Below, piece after piece: positions 2,016 through 25,691 of a stretch of 64,000 nucleotides of DNA. Origin of the DNA: Scyliorhinus canicula (lineage: Eukaryota); the NCBI RefSeq assembly GCF_902713615.1, contig NC_052157.1, positions 44,850,553 to 44,914,552 of the forward strand, read 5' to 3'. Both the position numbers and the translations under genes were made by a program. The notes below the pieces were generated by a model. The model saw nothing but the letters and a program-made list of their open reading frames with translations. It searched no databases and was not told the origin of the DNA. Numbering within the stretch: position 1 is the first letter of the stretch; every line of letters begins with the position of its first letter.

Positions 2016-2883
2016 TGAAAGTGGGTCTCGGAGATTCCCAAAATCATGGATCTGTACTGAAAGTGTCGGCTTCATGTCTGGAAGCACATAAGGTTGCAGG
2101 ACCTATGAAAGAAATCAGTTGTATTAATTACAATTAATTGGACCAGTTTTTCTGAAGGTTACCAAACAGCTCCCCTTTCAGTGCTTGTCAATATTAGCAT
2201 GAGTCAGATTGGACTTCCCCAAGCAGTTTAGAGGTGCTGGGTGGTCACAAAATTAATTGAAAATAGAGCAGAATTAAACAAAGAAATTAGTTTCCCTTCT
2301 TGTCAGGTGAAAGTCATTAAATCAGGATTTTGACCAAGCAGCCCTCATTTTTGACCCGGTCATGATGATATGTGATTTGGAGCACAATTTGGAAGGGGTG
2401 CACCGTGGCACCCTGGGAGTGCCAGGGTACCCCCTGCCCAGAGCCCAACCACCCAGGGCCTCTGATGGCCCCTCGCGAGATTTAAGGGCCTTGTCGCGTC
2501 ACAGAGTCAGGCTCGATGAGGTAATTTGATCGCACCGATCGTTTCATATCTTTCTCCCCCATTTACCTATCCAGCTTCCCTTTAAGTACAGTCCCTACAA
2601 AATTACTACTGTTTTTGTTGGCATTCCGGTTCTAGGAAAGGGAAGTGGTGTTGAAGTAACCTTGGTGAATTGCTGCCCTGCGTGTTATAAATCATACGTT
2701 CTTGATTGTGATACACCAGTGGTGGATGTCATAGATGTTGAGAGTAGAGGAATTTGCTCAATAATTTCATAATTTTAAAGCCTTTATTACAATGTATTAG
2801 CAACACAAAAACAGCCCATGTCAGCTTTTATGCACCATAATATACCTCCACTCATCCCTCTTCACCTGACAAATCAACATATT

Positions 2884-3385
2884 GGGCACAATTTACCACC
2901 CAAAAAATAGAATCCCATTTTGGGCACGAAGAGCGGGATGTTTCTTGGTGCCTGCAGCGCCGTGAATGACCCTGCTCTCAAATGGAACTCTTTTTTTTTA
3001 CCTCGGTAAGAACACTCCACTGAGGCTGCACTTACCTCACTTGTTGAGGTAAATGGTGAAACCTCATCATTTTTAAATGCTGCCCCGATCTCTCCCCACT
3101 CCCCCACCGCTGCCTTTGGATCCCTCCAACACCCCAATTTACCTGTTAGGGTTTCCTTGACACCCCCCCCCCCCCCCCTCCCCCACCACCTCATAAGGGT
3201 AGGACATCCTTGGGCCCGATCCCTGGCAAGGGCAACCTGGAACCCAAACACCGTGGCACCCTGGGAGTACCAGGGTACCCCCTGCCCAGAGCCCAACCAC
3301 CCAGGGCCTCTGATGGCCCCTCACGAGATTTAAGGGCCTTGTCGCGTCAGAGTTAGGCTCGATGAGGTAATTCGATCACACCGAT
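2884..3385. mobile_element. Non-autonomous PIF/Harbinger-like MITE (degraded)
   Basis: Starts with gggcacaattt, similar to the GGG-terminal TIR family found elsewhere in the window; GC-rich core with ggcac/gtgcc units. Right end approximate. Confidence 0.5.
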
Positions 3386-3733
3386 CATTTCATATCTTTC
3401 TCCCCCATTTACCTATCCAGCTTTCCCTTAAGTGCAGTTGCATGCTGATGGTAGACCCAGGTTAGCAATCACCCTCTTTATAAGGGGCAGTGTGCAGCAG
3501 AGCTCTTTGCTGTCAGCACTGTCCCTGGAGCAGGAGGAGAGAGTATTGTGAATTCCCCATTGGATTTATTAGTGGTTATCTTTGTTTATGGGCCCTCCTA
3601 TGAGCAAGTTCCACAAGTGGAAACACCTCTATGTCTGTCTTAACAAATCATTTCATAACTTGAAAGATCTCTATAAAGTCACCACTCAGTCTTTTGTCTA
3701 GAGAAAAGGGCCCTCAGCCTTTTCAATCTTTTT

Positions 3734-15199: not shown

Positions 15200-17585
15200 T
15201 TACTGATTTTTGGTGTGATTTTGCTAAAAGAAAACAAAGTCCCATAACGAGCATGTTTAATTGCATGTTTCTCGGCGCTCGCAGTGCCGGAAAATATGGC
15301 TATAAAACTGCACTCATATTAGATAAGGGGCCTCAGTGGGGAACATGCGGCCAAGGCCACACACAGCCCCATTTTATGCACTAGGTGTTCCGCTCACCGG
15401 AACTCTTCAGTATAGCGAAAGAAAACGGCGTCCCGATCTGAGGCCCCAACACAACCCTCAATCCCAAAGTGCTATAGGAGGGTTTCTAGCAGCCCCCCCC
15501 CCCCCGCCCCAACGCCCACGCAGGGCACCACGGCCCAATCGCCAGTACACAGAAAATGCCAGATTGGCAGTGCCAACCTGGCAGTGCTACCTGGGTGTGG
15601 TGATGTGCATCACTGCAAATACACAAGGGGTTAATGTAAATACATGTAGACTAGCTAGACACTAGAGGGAGCACCAGAGACATCACACACAAACACTCAA
15701 CCGATAGATCAGTGAGATAGGACACGACCAATGGGCATTCACGATACACACAGAGGTGACACGACCACAGGAGGCCATTACACCAACTCATATAAAGGAC
15801 ACCACACACAAGACATGACTCCAGTGTCACCAGCCTCCGCGGCGAGCTCGTGGACAGCCTCCCCGATAGACGCAACGCAAGACTCCAACGCGCAGTCCTT
15901 GCAGGAACAAGACCATGAGGGTCTAGCACCCTCTTCTGACCAACTAGCAGCAGACGATGCAAGTCTGCCATGCTCAATCAAACAGCAGGACGACCAAGAC
16001 GGTCTATCATGCTCCAGGGCAGAACAAAACGACGGTGACAGTCCAAGCCCAAGTGAAGAACAACAGCAAGACAATGACAGACCACCCACATTGGTTGCGC
16101 CACCAGATGAAGACTCTAACAATTTACTCAACCCAAGTGAACAGCTAGCAGCTACTGAGGCTCTACCCACGGTATGTGAGACGAGTGACGACAGCATCCC
16201 ACTTCCCATGCCAGTGCAAAGTGACAGATCTCAGCTAGTGTGCACAGAGGCACTCGACGATCACTGTGACACCACTGGTGACTCCAGTGACACCACGATA
16301 CTTCCAACCTCATTCGCTCGAACCTCTCTTCAAGTCAATGCATTCCTACATGTTCCAACTCCAGACGTGCAGCTTCAATAAATCTCAGCGGACTCCAGTG
16401 GACCTGCTAAGACTCCGGACAAGGAGCACCTGACTCCGGTGACACAAACGTGATTCCAGACGGGGAGCACCAACGAACCAACATTGACTCAGTTAACACA
16501 GACCGGACTCCAGATGGGGAGCAACCAAACGGCGACTCTGATTCACGTAAGTCGGACTTTACTCCAGACAGGAAGTGTCGCAACCTCAGTGATGGCACGC
16601 TCAGGGTGACAGCAGATGCCACAACGACAAGAGATGGATCACTTGGCAGTTACACTGGGTCAGTAATAACAAGCAGTGGCTACAGTCCGAGAGGAATTCA
16701 CCAATATTCCCCACAGCCATATCCACACATTTTGTCCACACCAGCTGTGCAGCCAATGACAGCTTTTGCTGGACAAACCCAAATCTGCATCACTATAAAT
16801 ACACAAAGGGTTAATATAAATACATGTAGACTAGCTAGACACTAGAGGGAGCACCAGAGACATCACACACACACACTCAACCAATAGATCAGTGAGATAG
16901 GACACGACCAATGGGCATTCACGATACACACAGAGGTACACGACCACAGGAGGGCATTACACCAACCCATATATAAAGGACACCACACACATGATCTGCC
17001 TCTTTCCAGTGGAGACAGTCAGTGAGTAGAGACACAGGGTTAATTTGATATCACTCCCACCACGTGGATTGTAGCAATCTGGTTAGTCAGTCTGAGTAGC
17101 TATAGTAGGATTAGCAGTAGTGTCGAACCCGAGTTATAGAAGTGTATATAGTTTAATAAATGTGTTGAAGTTATCTCCACGTCTGATCCTTCCTTTGTCA
17201 AGTGCACCACAAGGAAGCTGCTTATGCTACACCTAGAGCATAACAAGACACTGGGTAGTGCCAGGCTGGCACCAATGTGGCACAGCCAGGGTGCCCGGGT
17301 GGTACCAGTAGTGCTAGGGTACCACCCTGCCCAGAATGCCTGCACCTGGGGGCCTCTGAAGCCTTGGGAGACCTCCACGAGTCCTGTTTCATCTGGTCCC
17401 CGTTTTAGGAGACCAATACTGAACATGCGCTCGCCCGAGGTCTCCGAGAGAAGGAGATTGATCCCACGGGATTCGGGAATCTACACATTAAAATGAGACT
17501 AGCTGTCTCACTTTAATATGCAGATTTGCTAAAATGTGGGCGGGGTATACAGCGCACCGTCTCGTGAGATTTATCGACCCTGATG
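15200..17585. mobile_element. Harbinger-like MITE interrupted by an LTR element
   Basis: The ggcagtgcc/ggcacc repeat-rich core is continuous across the LTR insertion site (...gcagtgctacctggg | tagtgccaggctggcacc). Outer ends approximate. Confidence 0.5.
15596..17250 (+). mobile_element. Internally deleted LTR retrotransposon (Gypsy-like, non-autonomous)
   Basis: TG...CA termini with 5-bp TSD CTGGG (15591-15595, 17251-17255). ~205-bp direct repeat at ~15606-15810 and ~16785-16990. The 3' LTR has CCAAT boxes, TATAAA and AATAAA (17155). Confidence 0.85.
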
Positions 17586-21080: not shown

Positions 21081-22509
21081 AAAGGGAGTAACATTTTAAT
21101 TTTTAGCAGCTTTGCCTGAAGGGCTCATTGAAATGGTTGCTTCATCTTTGGAGCATTTTTCTGGCACTCCCACTGCATGATTGGAAGAGTCCCTAATTTA
21201 CGTAAATGCAATCTTTACAAGTCCTGTGCACAGTTGATTGAAAAGTTTCTACTACATTAGGTGCTTCTTGCTCACATTAGTTTGTGCATAACACACAGAG
21301 TATGGGATAGGTCTCAGACCACTGCATGTGATCATATCAGCTCAAAATGGGTATCTCAGCATATTATTAGCCCCACAGTGTAGTAAGTTACTTTCCATTT
21401 ATTTTCTTCATTAGAGGCTTGACAGTTACACAGCATGTACACCTACAAAGGTTGTGTTGAGAGCAGGGCAGGCCAGGCACAGATCAAGTGAAGGATGTCT
21501 GTGCTGAGGGATGGCAGAACCTTCCCTCTTAAGTGTCAGCACCAAGTGTTGTCAGATCATGGTAGCACAACTCAATGCATGCCTTTGTTTCAAAACCAGG
21601 AGGATGCTTTGTAGGAATCCTTCAAATGTTACTTGTCTGAATCTGATAACCAACTTAGTATCAGGCCCAGGGCACGTCTCTGTCTCTGTTGTTTTCCTTC
21701 AAATTGCTTGGAGACCATCTAAACTCATTTCACTGTCAGACGAAAGAGGAAACTTATTTCATGTGCTGAACTTGAATCCAGGGTCTCGGTGCTTAAATAG
21801 ATGTATGTACTTTTAAATAGTTATGTTGTTTATAGAAACTATCTTACGGCCACAAAAATCAGAGATATTTAAAAATAAGATGTAATTCCCAGTTTAATAG
21901 AAATTTGTATTTCCATTTGTGTCTGTAAAGCGTACCACTTTGGTTTTGACCTTTCCACTTGCCATATGGAAGGAACCATAATTAGTGGGGACCGTTTAAT
22001 GGACTTAGCTTAATGTGCAATATAAACCCCATTCAACCTGTCAGCTGTTCTGCTATTTGATATCTGTTATATGCTCTTTTTTTAAAGTAATAAACTATCC
22101 TAAATGCAGCAGACCAATGATGAGCATTGGGCTGTAATGTAGGACTATATTAGATTCAAACTTTGAAATGGCAATGTGCTTTGCATTGACTACATTACCC
22201 ATGCTATACAAGAATGGGATTTTTTCCAGATGTTCGGTTTTATTGATGTGAAAATTCGGAAGAGGCACAGTTTCAAAACCATTTCAGATCCGGTTACATG
22301 CTTTGATTGTGGTATCCAATAGCCTAAACCATTTCCTATTCTGTTACATTATTTAATTGTGGCATCATACGACTTAATAACTCTATAAGAGAATTTATTT
22401 TTCTGCCATTTCTGTGCTTTGAAACCAAATTGCTTTCATACGTAAGTTGGTGAACCACTTATTGAAAATCAAAGAAAATCCACACAATTTAGTAAAGAGC
22501 AGAGAAAGA

Positions 22510-22925
22510 CAGCATTTCTGAGGGATAACATTTTTAATATTTAATCTGAATAATTTGACTGCTTGTCCTATTTTGTTGCATTGCCTTGTAAAGCGTTCTG
22601 ATTACTCATTACCTAAGCAAGTGCTCCCTGAAATCATAGCCCTATTCACTGTGTAACAATGACATTTAAAACTCCCAACCAGCCCTACTGCACCTTTCAT
22701 AACCCCCTGGCTATTTCTACAGTGTCTGTAGCTAAATACTGTATTGGCACTTCTGATTGTGTGATCTAAAAGAAGCAAATTCACTGCCGACACCAAGATT
22801 AGGTTTATTAGAAACCAGTTCTGTTGATTTACTGTGGGCTTTTTTCCTATATGAACACCAAAATATTCACATGAGAGTTTCCTAATGGGAAGGATGATCC
22901 AAACTTGTCAAGCAGCAGGACGATT
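22510..22925 (+). repeat. Left copy of ~420-bp direct repeat flanking the RTE LINE
   Basis: Aligns end to end with 25258-25691 (cagcat..tgagggataa ... caggacgatt). Confidence 0.9.
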
Positions 22926-25257
22926 TTTTTCTTCTTCTTCCAAGATCATTCACTAATGAGTATGATTGTCCACCTAAGAAAGTCCGCATTACTGATCATG
23001 GGTTCTGTGGGTTCCTGCATGATCCTGGAGCCACATCTTTGACCGCACACTTGCCATGGATTTCCGGGAGGTGGGATCAGTCCTTGGACTCTAGATTGCT
23101 GATATTCCTTTCTCCAGGCTCCTTTTTCGGGCTTCCTCGTGCTGTCGGGTGTCCTCAAAGAATTTTGTCCCTTCAATCAGGAGGTTCCCCCATGTAGGTG
23201 TCTTCTGAGCGAAGGTATCCTAGGCATTGACATTGATGTTGCATTTCTTGAGGTAAGCCTTCACAGTGCCTTTGAAGCTTTTCCTTTGTTCGTTGTCCAC
23301 CTCTTGTTTGGGAGACTTTCTTGAACTGGGCAAAGAGGATTTGCTTGGCAGTCGGGACTCTGACATCCTAAGCACATGGCCGCCAGTGGAGTTGGTTTCG
23401 GATGACCATGGCCTCGGATGCTAGTGCTCTTGGCTCCTTCAAGGACATTGATGTTAGTATGCCTGCCCTCCTAGCTGATGCAGCAAATCCATCTCGAACA
23501 GCTTTGATGATGCTTCTCCAGTGTCTTGGGGTGGTGTCTTTACGTAGTCCAAGGGCGCAATTCTCCGCACTCACGACGGTGCGGAGAATAGCGAGAGTCG
23601 TAAATTTTTACGGCCACGCTAGTCCGACGCCCTCCCGCTATTCTCCCCCCACGCCCAACCCCCGACACGAATCGCTACCGCCGTTTTTTTACGGCCAGCA
23701 GCGATTCTCAGCTGGCCGATGGGCCGAATTCCAAGCCCTTTACGGCCGTTTTTACGAACGGCAAACACACCTGGTCTGGCCGTTCGTAAAAACGGTCGTA
23801 AAGTCCCGATTTTGAAAACCATGGCACCGATTGGCACGGCAGTACCACGGCCGTGCCAAGGGTGCCATGGGCCCGCGATCGGTGGGCACCGATCGCGGGC
23901 AGCGGGTCCGATTCCCGCGCACTCTTTGTCCTTCCGCCGCCCCGCTGTATCACTTCGTGGGGCGGCTGAGGGGCAGCCCGGCCCACGCATGCGCAGGTTT
24001 CGCGCAAATACGCGATGACGTCATCCGCGCATGCGCGGGTTGGAGTCTTCCAATCCGCGCATGCGCGGCTGACGTCATGTGACGCATCAGCCGGCGCAAA
24101 CTCTGGCAAGCGGGCTTAACGAAATTCGTTAAGCCCGCGATGCCGGAGTTCACGGCCGCGGCATACTAGCCCCGACCGGGGACCAGAATCGGTTCCCGGT
24201 CGGGGAGGGGGAGGCTGGCGTCAAACCCGCCCGGTTTTGACGCCAGCCTTACGATTTCTCCCTGTCTGGGAGAATCGCGCCCCAAGTTTCTCAGCCGTAT
24301 GGAAGAGTTGGGAGGACAACTGCCTTAAACAACAAGGATCTTGGTGTCAACACGAATGTCACGGTCACCAAAGACTCTTTTCCTTGGGCATCTCAAGGAG
24401 GCGCTTGCGGATCTCCGCATGGATGTCAGCCTTAGAGGAGAGTTGGTTCCCAGGTATGGGAAATGGGTTTCACTGTTGATCCTGATGGAGGGAGAGACCG
24501 GATCTTGCCCTGGGGCGGGTTGGTAAAAGAATTGAGTCTTCTTGAGGTTGAGGCTGAGACCAATGCTTCCACGAAGGTGTCGAGCATGACTTTGGAGATT
24601 GTATTCTGGGAGATTGGAGAATGGCGATGTCATCTGCATACTTAAGTTCCATGAGTGATGTCAGTGTTGTTTTCTTCTTGGATTTTAACTGGTTGAGGTT
24701 GAAATGTTCTTCGTCATGCAGACTATGTCCATTCCACTGGTAGTGACAAGGTGAAGTATGGTGGCAATGAAGATGGAGAAAAGAGTAGGGGTGATGACAT
24801 ATTCCTGCTTGACTCCCAATCCTGACCTCAAAGGTTTCTGTCTTATTTTCCACCAGTGAGGACTTCACCGACATGTTGTTGTGGTGGAGCCGGAGGATGT
24901 TGATGAATTTCTCTGGACAGCCGGCCTTTGACAGGGTCTTCCGCAGCACTTCCCGATTGACTGAGTCATGAGCCTTGGTCAGATTGATGAAGGCCATGAA
25001 GAGTAGAGTGGTTGATGCTGCTCCTGGCATTTCTCCTGAAGTTGCCGAGCAGAGAAAATTATTACCACTGTTCCAGGGTTTGGTCGGACGCCACACTGGC
25101 TTTCTGGAAGGATTTCTTCAGAGACTGGGATAAGGCGGCTCGCGAGGATTCGGGCGATGATCTTCCCGTAATGGAAAGTAGGGAGATTCCTCAGTATTCC
25201 TACAGTCCGCTTTGTCTCCTTTCTTGAAGATGGAGGTGATAACTGCATTCCTGAGCT
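22926..25257 (-). mobile_element. RTE-clade LINE, 5'-truncated and degraded
   Basis: Minus-strand RT peptides GKIIARILASRLIPVSEEILPESQCG, FSARQLQEKCQEQ, AHDSVNRE, ELKYADD, GLSLNLKKT, QLHW; (GAA)n-type tail at 22926-22940. Confidence 0.85.
23553..24282. mobile_element. Young PIF/Harbinger-like MITE nested in the RTE
   Basis: 14-bp TIRs gggcgcaattctcc / ggagaatcgcgccc; 3-bp TSD CAA (23550-23552, 24283-24285); very CpG-rich with many internal hairpins. Confidence 0.85.
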
Positions 25258-25691
25258 CAGCATATTTGAGGGATAATGTTTTTAATATTTAATCAGAATG
25301 ATATCACTACTTGTCCTATTTTGTTGCATTGCCTTGTAAAACTTTCTGATTACTCATTACCTATTGCAGACATCACTGCCTAAGCAAGCGCCTCCCTGAA
25401 ATCATAGCCATATTCACTGTGCAGCAATGACATTTAAAACTCCCAACCAGCCCTACTGCACCTTTCATAACCCTCTGGCTATTTCTAGTGTCTGTAGCTA
25501 AATATCGTGTTGGCAGTTCTGGCTGTATGACCCAACGAAAGCAAATTTTCTGCAGCCTCTTAAGATTAGGTTGATTGCAAACAGTTATGTGGATTTACTG
25601 TGGGCTTTTTGCCTATATAAGCTCCAAAATATTCACAAAAGTGTTTCCCAATTTGAAGGATGATCCAAGCTTGTCAAACAACAGGACGATT
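25258..25691 (+). repeat. Right copy of ~420-bp direct repeat flanking the RTE LINE
   Basis: Aligns with 22510-22925 and carries an extra ~19 bp (ttgcagacatcactgccta) bounded by ccta microhomology. Confidence 0.9.

What the first reader, a model, noticed from the sequence alone, without database searches (positions are those of the whole stretch)
22510..25691. RTE LINE bracketed by a giant (~420 bp) target-site duplication
Seen: 22510-22925 and 25258-25691 align end to end as direct repeats of non-repetitive-looking DNA. They abut the two ends of a 5'-truncated minus-strand RTE exactly: the (GAA)n tail starts right after the left copy, and the truncated 5' end stops right before the right copy. 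Known: ordinary LINE TSDs are ~5-20 bp, but C. elegans RTE-1 is reported to make target duplications of hundreds of bp. Inference: this shark RTE lineage makes its second-strand nick ~430 bp away and so duplicates host DNA at each insertion. That would be a route to duplicating enhancers or small exons in a vertebrate genome.
Basis: partly seen in the sequence, partly recalled or inferred. Interest (0 to 1): 0.8.

Follow-up and report, generated by a model that had tools for sequence, protein, structure and literature searches.

The report
Old LINE insertion with 420-bp target duplication
A decayed, 5'-truncated RTE-type jumping gene sits exactly between two copies of a ~420-bp stretch of host DNA, most likely an unusually long target-site duplication from one insertion event, which is a rare but already known outcome for LINEs and not shown to be a habit of this element family.

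Summary
22510-22925 and 25258-25691 are direct repeats (361/413 aligned bases identical, 5 indels; blastn E 1e-125). They occur nowhere else in the 64-kb window.

They abut both ends of a minus-strand RTE/Rex3-like LINE. Its (GAA)4AAA tail starts at 22926. Its truncated reverse-transcriptase end stops at 25257-25261, sharing 4 nt (GCTG) with the repeat. A 728-bp inverted-repeat element is nested inside the LINE.

Junction details fit target-primed reverse transcription: a first nick at GATT^AT, a duplication that starts with A, and 5' microhomology. The LINE has 10-14 frameshifts and 4 stops in 1.6 kb. That decay matches the decay of the repeats, so both appear to be the same age. I read this as one long target-site duplication (about 0.75).

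The lineage-wide claim is not supported. The closest retrievable relatives share the same 3' motif and (GAA)n tail, yet have duplications of 0-11 bp in five copies, and an amphioxus copy has 18 bp. The literature gives 7-15 bp for the RTE clade.

Duplications over 100 bp are already documented for L1, Dualen and R9. No other shark copies and no orthologous empty site could be reached with these tools. The scan separately noted a SINE flanked by a 3.1-kb repeat in this genome; I did not check it.

The parts
22510..22925 (.). Left copy of the direct repeat (416 bp). In the LINE's orientation it lies downstream of the tail.
   Evidence: aligns end to end with 25258-25691, 87.4% identity over aligned bases
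22926..22945 (-). The LINE's very short 3' UTR and tail, TCTTG(GAA)4AAA, directly after the stop codon at 22946-22948
   Evidence: The upstream 3' motif AATCATACTC...TGA..GAT plus a (GAA)n tail is shared with relatives L001 and L004
22926..23553 (-). 3' part of the RTE/Rex3-like LINE (C-terminal part of the ORF, decayed)
   Evidence: tblastn and frameshift-aware alignment to P0195, P0201 and P0097
23554..24281 (.). Nested 728-bp GC-rich, hairpin-rich element with 13-bp terminal inverted repeats (GGCGCAATTCTCC / GGAGAATCGCGCC). It is flanked by CCAAG on both sides (23549-23553 and 24282-24286) and inserted later than the LINE.
   Evidence: The LINE reading frame resumes across it
24287..25257 (-). 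5' part of the LINE: reverse-transcriptase domain, truncated at about residue 536-572 of the ~1050-1100-aa relatives (endonuclease domain missing)
25258..25261 (-). 4 nt (GCTG on the minus strand) present in both repeat copies that also fit the LINE's conserved Ala-Glu/Asp codons: probable 5'-junction microhomology
   Evidence: (an A or S residue, then D/E-L-R, in relatives)
25258..25691 (.). Right copy of the direct repeat (434 bp, including a 19-bp indel). In the LINE's orientation it lies upstream of the truncated 5' end.

Best explanation

Inferred sequence of events:
1. The element's endonuclease nicked the window's + strand at GACGATT^ATCAG (25691/25692).
2. The TT-3'OH primed on the A-rich (GAA)n tail of the LINE RNA.
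3. Reverse transcription stopped, or was cut short, inside the reverse-transcriptase region.
4. The other strand was broken about 416 nt away, at AATGCTG^TCTTTCT, instead of the usual ~10 nt.
5. That strand's 3' end annealed to the cDNA through about 4 nt (GCTG) and primed second-strand synthesis.
6. Fill-in of the two long single-stranded stretches left the host block on both sides of the insert.

Afterwards a 728-bp inverted-repeat element landed inside the LINE. Everything then decayed neutrally, probably with a gene-conversion patch in the left ~240 bp of the repeats.

Shown directly: the repeats, the exact abutment at both ends, the tail, the truncation, the nested insertion, and equal decay. 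Inferred: the nick positions, the microhomology, the conversion patch, and that the distant break was a sporadic event (a stray or repair/replication-associated nick, as proposed for L1) and not a property of the family.
For: Both repeat ends coincide with the LINE's ends to within 0-4 nt.

The block occurs only twice in 64 kb, while the window's SINE families have many copies.

The block has no LTR features: no TG...CA termini and no short flanking duplication.

The first-nick context GATT^AT resembles that of relatives (AGTT^AA, CTTT^AT). A duplication starting with A matches A-rich-tailed animal RTEs (PMC6007223).

The 4-nt overlap at the 5' junction fits conserved codons of relatives.

Age match: the repeats differ by 52 substitutions and 5 indels per 413 bp across two lineages. 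That predicts about 10 indels and about 5 stops in 1603 bp of LINE. Observed are 10-14 frameshifts and 4 stops.

Duplications over 100 bp, up to kilobases, are documented for L1 and attributed to a distant second nick (PMC5223499). They are also documented for Dualen and R9 (PMC9977147).
Against: No empty site and no genome-wide copy count of the block could be obtained, so a low-copy dispersed repeat is not excluded.

Divergence between the copies is uneven: about 7% in the left 240 bp against about 20% in the right 175 bp (Fisher p = 1.3e-4). That needs an extra assumption, gene conversion or local constraint.

The age match is rough because the indel count is small.

The microhomology rests on codons of relatives only about 50% identical to this element, not on this family's own sequence.
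Confidence: 0.75

Rival explanations
1. Family trait: this shark RTE lineage, or the shark's repair environment, regularly places the second break hundreds of bp away, so most of its insertions duplicate long stretches of host DNA.
For: This copy has a ~416-bp duplication. Another first-stage note in the same genome reports a SINE flanked by a 3.1-kb direct repeat (s1-240195; unchecked). Published RTE surveys searched only for duplications of 10-49 bp, so long ones would have been missed (PMC6007223). A LINE family with a median duplication of 900 bp exists (Dualen-4b, PMC9977147).
Against: This is a single case. Five copies of the closest retrievable family, with the same 3' motif and (GAA)n tail and 52% amino-acid identity, have duplications of about 0-11 bp. 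An amphioxus relative has 18 bp. The RTE-clade mode is 10-12 bp, including in zebrafish (Ichiyanagi and Okada 2008, as cited in PMC6007223). No other copy of this family lies in the window.
Confidence: 0.08
2. Pre-existing tandem duplication: the ~420-bp block was already duplicated head to tail, and the LINE happened to insert at the junction between the two copies.
For: Local unique direct repeats of ~200 bp that are not obviously LINE-associated exist elsewhere in the window (2401-2592 / 3249-3438 and 15603-15821 / 16783-17002). Small duplications therefore do arise here by other routes. The uneven divergence of the repeat is not predicted by a simple one-step duplication.
Against: The insertion would have to land within 0-4 nt of the junction of an ~830-bp tandem pair, roughly a 1-in-200 coincidence. 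The LINE would also have no recognisable short duplication of its own, and none is seen at the junctions. The repeats and the LINE have decayed to the same degree.
Confidence: 0.07
3. The block is itself a low-copy mobile or dispersed repeat (an LTR, a SINE-like unit or part of a composite element), and the LINE lies between two independent copies.
For: Genome-wide copy number could not be measured. The window is very repeat-rich.
Against: There are only two copies in 64 kb, both touching the LINE. The block lacks TG...CA termini, a flanking short duplication, a tail, a tRNA-like head and any Rfam match. Its ends bear no resemblance to the LINE's 3' end. Two independent copies ending exactly at the LINE's two ends would be a double coincidence.
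Confidence: 0.05

Closest known systems
Large (>100 bp) target-site duplications of human L1 (Gilbert 2002/2005 and Symer 2002, as summarised in PMC5223499)
   Same: A LINE inserted by target-primed reverse transcription, often 5'-truncated, is flanked by direct repeats of hundreds of bp to kilobases. This is attributed to a second-strand break far from the first nick. The possible duplication of exons is already discussed there.
   Different: L1 is a different clade, with a poly(A) tail and two ORFs. Those cases are de novo events in cultured cells (under 10% of events in HeLa, most events in repair-deficient cells). This case is an ancient fixed germline insertion of an RTE-type element.
Ordinary RTE-clade / Rex3 insertions
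   Same: Relatives carry one ORF with an AP-endonuclease and a reverse transcriptase. The stop codon lies a few nt from a (GAA)n-type tail. 5' truncation is common, the first nick is A/T-rich, and the duplication starts with A.
   Different: The usual duplication is 7-15 bp, and 0-18 bp in the relatives examined here. This copy has ~416 bp.
Dualen-4b_cRei (Chlamydomonas) and rotifer R9
   Same: LINEs flanked by exceptionally long duplications: median 900 bp for Dualen-4b and 126 bp for R9 (PMC9977147).
   Different: There the long duplication is a family-wide, reproducible trait, tied to dual endonucleases or to site specificity. Here only one copy is known and its relatives make short duplications.
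C. elegans RTE-1 (Youngman 1996; Malik and Eickbush 1998)
   Same: It is the founding member of the clade.
   Different: The claim could not be checked because the papers are not in the held library. A later survey of 53 RTE-1 copies looked only for duplications of 10-49 bp.

Membership tests
[quoted passage not shown] | Single ORF of about 1000 aa with an N-terminal AP-endonuclease and a reverse transcriptase | tested here: inconclusive
   The reverse-transcriptase and C-terminal parts are present and align to residues ~540-1089 of relatives 1041-1099 aa long. Those relatives carry PF03372, PF14529 and PF00078. The endonuclease part is absent from this 5'-truncated copy. Pfam found nothing in the broken ORF pieces themselves.
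[quoted passage not shown] | Unusually short 3' UTR ending in short A-rich tandem repeats | tested here: met
   The stop codon is at 22946-22948, followed by 20 nt, TCTTG(GAA)4AAA. Compare the RTE description in PMC1291365 and the Rex3 (GAA)2 tail 3 nt after the stop in PMC6274825.
[quoted passage not shown] | Reverse-transcriptase phylogeny groups it with reference RTE elements (RTE-1, BovB, Rex3) | not tested
The relatives found are unnamed or auto-named.
Target-site duplication made by target-primed reverse transcription | Direct repeats of host DNA immediately abut the 3' tail and the 5' end of the insert | tested here: met
   0-2 nt ambiguity at the tail and a 4-nt overlap at the 5' end.
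Target-site duplication made by target-primed reverse transcription | The repeat is single-copy host DNA and an empty site exists in relatives | not testable with these tools
   Only the 64-kb window is available, and there the block has two copies. No shark sequence could be reached.
Target-site duplication made by target-primed reverse transcription | The repeats are as old as the insert | tested here: met
   The repeats differ by 52 substitutions and 5 indels per 413 bp. The LINE has 10-14 frameshifts and 4 stops per 1603 bp. These agree within wide Poisson limits.
LINE families with obligate long duplications (Dualen-4b, R9 type) | Most or all copies of the family carry long duplications | tested here: not met
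   This was tested only on the nearest retrievable relatives: five copies have 0-11 bp and one amphioxus copy has 18 bp.

The most novel reading that the evidence does not exclude
Long target duplications of hundreds of bp to kilobases are a recurrent outcome of RTE or RTE-dependent SINE insertion in this shark genome. The cause could be the element or a host repair peculiarity. Retrotransposition would then be a steady source of small local duplications of intronic or regulatory DNA. The unchecked note of a SINE flanked by a 3.1-kb repeat in the same genome would be a second instance.
Probability: 0.1. Interest if true: 0.65.

Novelty: new member of a known kind. Interest (0 to 1): 0.3.

Why it matters
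If the reading is right, this is a clean fossil of a LINE insertion whose second-strand break lay about 416 bp from the first. It shows that the large duplications seen for L1 in cultured cells also arise and become fixed in the germline with an RTE-type element in a cartilaginous fish.

It also points to a blind spot. Published RTE surveys cap the duplication search at 49 bp, so the long tail of the distribution is unmeasured. As one event, it does not change what is known about the mechanism.

Tried and rejected
- **Broken ORF pieces.** Pfam on six ORF pieces of the LINE found nothing because the frames are broken. I identified the LINE instead through a representatives search, tblastn and a frameshift-aware alignment.
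- **Other copies of the shark family.** I could not collect any. A word-index search with the 208-aa ORF scored nothing. A search with the whale-shark fragment P0034 (76% identical in its best 46-aa stretch) found only itself. Relatives of P0097 were amphioxus, crustacean, coral, flatworm and unnamed metagenomic proteins.
- **Earlier findings of the scan.** Searches by place and by sequence came back blank.
- **Source papers for the RTE-1 precedent.** They are not held, and text searches did not recover the claim.
- **Rfam and tandem repeats.** Rfam gave no hit over the window, and the tandem-repeat scan around the locus showed nothing relevant.
- **LTR reading of the block.** Rejected: no TG...CA termini, no short flanking duplication, and the interior is a LINE running from its tail to a truncation point.
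- **Tandem duplication of [block + LINE].** Rejected: no LINE sequence follows the right copy.
- **Duplication made of only half the block.** I considered this to explain the uneven divergence. It is rejected because both halves are present on both sides of the LINE.
- **Host exons as a route to orthologous loci.** Rejected because the open-frame scan was uninformative: 425 open frames, mostly transposon-derived.

Full report
**Observation**

The repeat finder, blastn and MAFFT all show that 22510-22925 (416 bp) and 25258-25691 (434 bp) are direct repeats that align end to end. blastn gives 82.6% identity over 437 columns, E about 1e-125. A global alignment gives 361 identical of 413 aligned bases (87.4%, 52 mismatches) and five indel events, one of them 19 bp.

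A self-comparison of the whole window finds no third copy of the block and no second copy of the element between the repeats. The window's SINE-like families, by contrast, recur many times. The copies differ by about 13%, so this is not an assembly artefact.

**What lies between the repeats**

The minus strand of 22926-25257 encodes a decayed reverse transcriptase with motifs such as LRNAVITSIFKKGDK, YADDIAIL and a C-terminal ...CGQRCGSRI.... Pfam misses the broken ORF pieces. An exhaustive representatives search followed by tblastn aligns the region to residues ~540-1030 of ~1050-1100-aa proteins. Those proteins carry Exo_endo_phos plus RVT_1.

A frameshift-aware alignment gives 52% amino-acid identity to P0195, running from window 25261 down to 23021. 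The copy therefore lacks the endonuclease half and is 5'-truncated.

Its stop codon (22946-22948) is followed by only 20 nt, TCTTG(GAA)4AAA. That is the RTE/Rex3 hallmark of a very short 3' UTR ending in short A-rich repeats (PMC1291365; PMC6274825). The 3' end shares the motif AATCATACTC..TGA..GAT-(GAA)n with the P0195 family. A whale-shark protein fragment (P0034) is 76% identical over its best 46-aa stretch, so the family exists in another shark. I did not run a phylogeny against reference RTEs.

A 728-bp GC-rich element full of small hairpins (23554-24281) interrupts the LINE. It has 13-bp terminal inverted repeats and is flanked by CCAAG on both sides, so it arrived later.

**Junctions**

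The left repeat ends ...CAGGACGATT at 22925, and the right repeat ends with the same bases at 25691 followed by ATCAGTAC. After the left copy the LINE tail begins at once. In the element's orientation the duplication starts AATCG... right after the A-rich tail. The inferred first nick on the window's + strand is GACGATT^ATCAG.

Relatives with clear short duplications show similar contexts, AGTT^AA and CTTT^AT. Animal RTEs with A-rich tails typically have duplications that start with A (PMC6007223).

At the other end, more than 20 relatives align up to 25258-25261 with a conserved A/S-D/E-L-R motif. The four bases GCTG (minus strand) belong to both repeat copies and also fit the LINE's Ala and Glu/Asp codons. 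This is what microhomology-primed second-strand synthesis at a 5'-truncated insertion would leave. It is an inference, because relatives about 50% identical to this element stand in for the family's own sequence.

**Age test**

If the repeats arose with the insertion, the two should have decayed alike. The repeats show 52 substitutions and 5 indels per 413 bp summed over two lineages. Scaled to one lineage and 1603 bp of LINE, that predicts roughly 10 indels, 100-130 substitutions and hence about 5 new stop codons.

The frameshift-aware alignment finds 10-14 frameshifts and 4 in-frame stops. The agreement is rough because the counts are small, but it argues against a much older or much younger duplication.

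One oddity remains. Divergence is about 7% in the left ~240 bp and about 20% in the right ~175 bp (Fisher p = 1.3e-4). Both halves occur on both sides of the LINE, so a shorter original duplication cannot explain this. Later gene conversion between the copies, which lie 2.7 kb apart, is the simplest account. Constraint on the left half cannot be excluded.

**Is it a family habit?**

No other copy of this LINE lies in the window, and shark genomes proved unreachable with the available collections. As a proxy I fetched the closest relatives that sit on long contigs.

- Five copies of the P0195 family, which shares the 3' motif and (GAA)n tail, have clearly defined ends. Their duplications are 11, about 6, about 0, 11 and 11 bp.
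- An amphioxus relative has an 18-bp duplication.
- The literature gives 7-15 bp for RTE-clade LINEs, with a mode of 10-12 bp.

That survey searched only for duplications of 10-49 bp, so rare long ones would have been missed.

**Comparison with known cases**

- L1 duplications over 100 bp occur in under 10% of recovered events in HeLa cells. They reach 5.3 kb in cells deficient in nucleotide-excision repair. They are ascribed to use of a distant, unrelated second nick, and exon duplication is noted as a consequence (PMC5223499).
- Dualen-4b has a median duplication of 900 bp and R9 has 126 bp (PMC9977147).

**Rivals**

- A LINE landing exactly at the junction of a pre-existing tandem pair needs about a 1-in-200 coincidence, and the LINE would have no short duplication of its own.
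- A dispersed or LTR-like block needs a double coincidence, and the block lacks every structural mark of such elements.
- Neither can be formally excluded without the genome-wide copy number and an orthologous empty site.

**Verdict**

The best reading is a single sporadic long target-site duplication made by an RTE-type LINE (about 0.75). It is a new example of a known phenomenon, of modest interest. A small chance (about 0.1) remains that long duplications are recurrent in this genome. The scan's unchecked note s1-240195, a SINE flanked by a 3.1-kb repeat, makes that worth a genome-wide look.

Noticed in passing
window 23549-24286: A 728-bp GC-rich (60-67%) element nested in the LINE. It has 13-bp terminal inverted repeats (GGCGCAATTCTCC), is flanked by CCAAG on both sides, and is packed with a dozen short near-perfect hairpins, for example 24015-24078 with 30-nt arms. 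It looks like a non-autonomous DNA transposon of unidentified superfamily.
   Followed up: partly
window 2401-2592 and 3249-3438: A unique local direct repeat (192 bp, 94% identical) flanks 656 bp that shows no LINE tail or reverse-transcriptase signal. It has no other copy in the window. Its origin is unknown: a local duplication or a small LTR-like element.
   Followed up: partly
window 15603-15821 and 16783-17002: A unique local direct repeat (~220 bp, 93% identical) flanks ~960 bp that contains a 221-codon open frame (15716-16378). It may be a small LTR-type or composite element and is not LINE-like.
   Followed up: partly
window 22510-22925 vs 25258-25691: Divergence between the two repeat copies is strongly uneven: about 7% in the first ~240 bp and about 20% in the last ~175 bp (p = 1.3e-4). 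This suggests a gene-conversion tract or local constraint.
   Followed up: partly
L001, L003-L006 (ENA assemblies ERZ25073769, ERZ25073763, ERZ26696836): A young, nearly identical (98.8-99.9%) full-length RTE family of 3983 bp with an intact 1099-1120-aa ORF, a (GAA)n tail and ~11-bp target duplications. It lies on long contigs of 'metagenome' assemblies, so those contigs evidently come from an unidentified eukaryote. L006 carries an internal ~845-bp deletion.
   Followed up: partly
window 22276-22316 and 22326-22366: A 41-nt unit repeated 50 bp apart at 80% identity, just upstream of the left repeat copy. Its significance is unknown.
   Followed up: no
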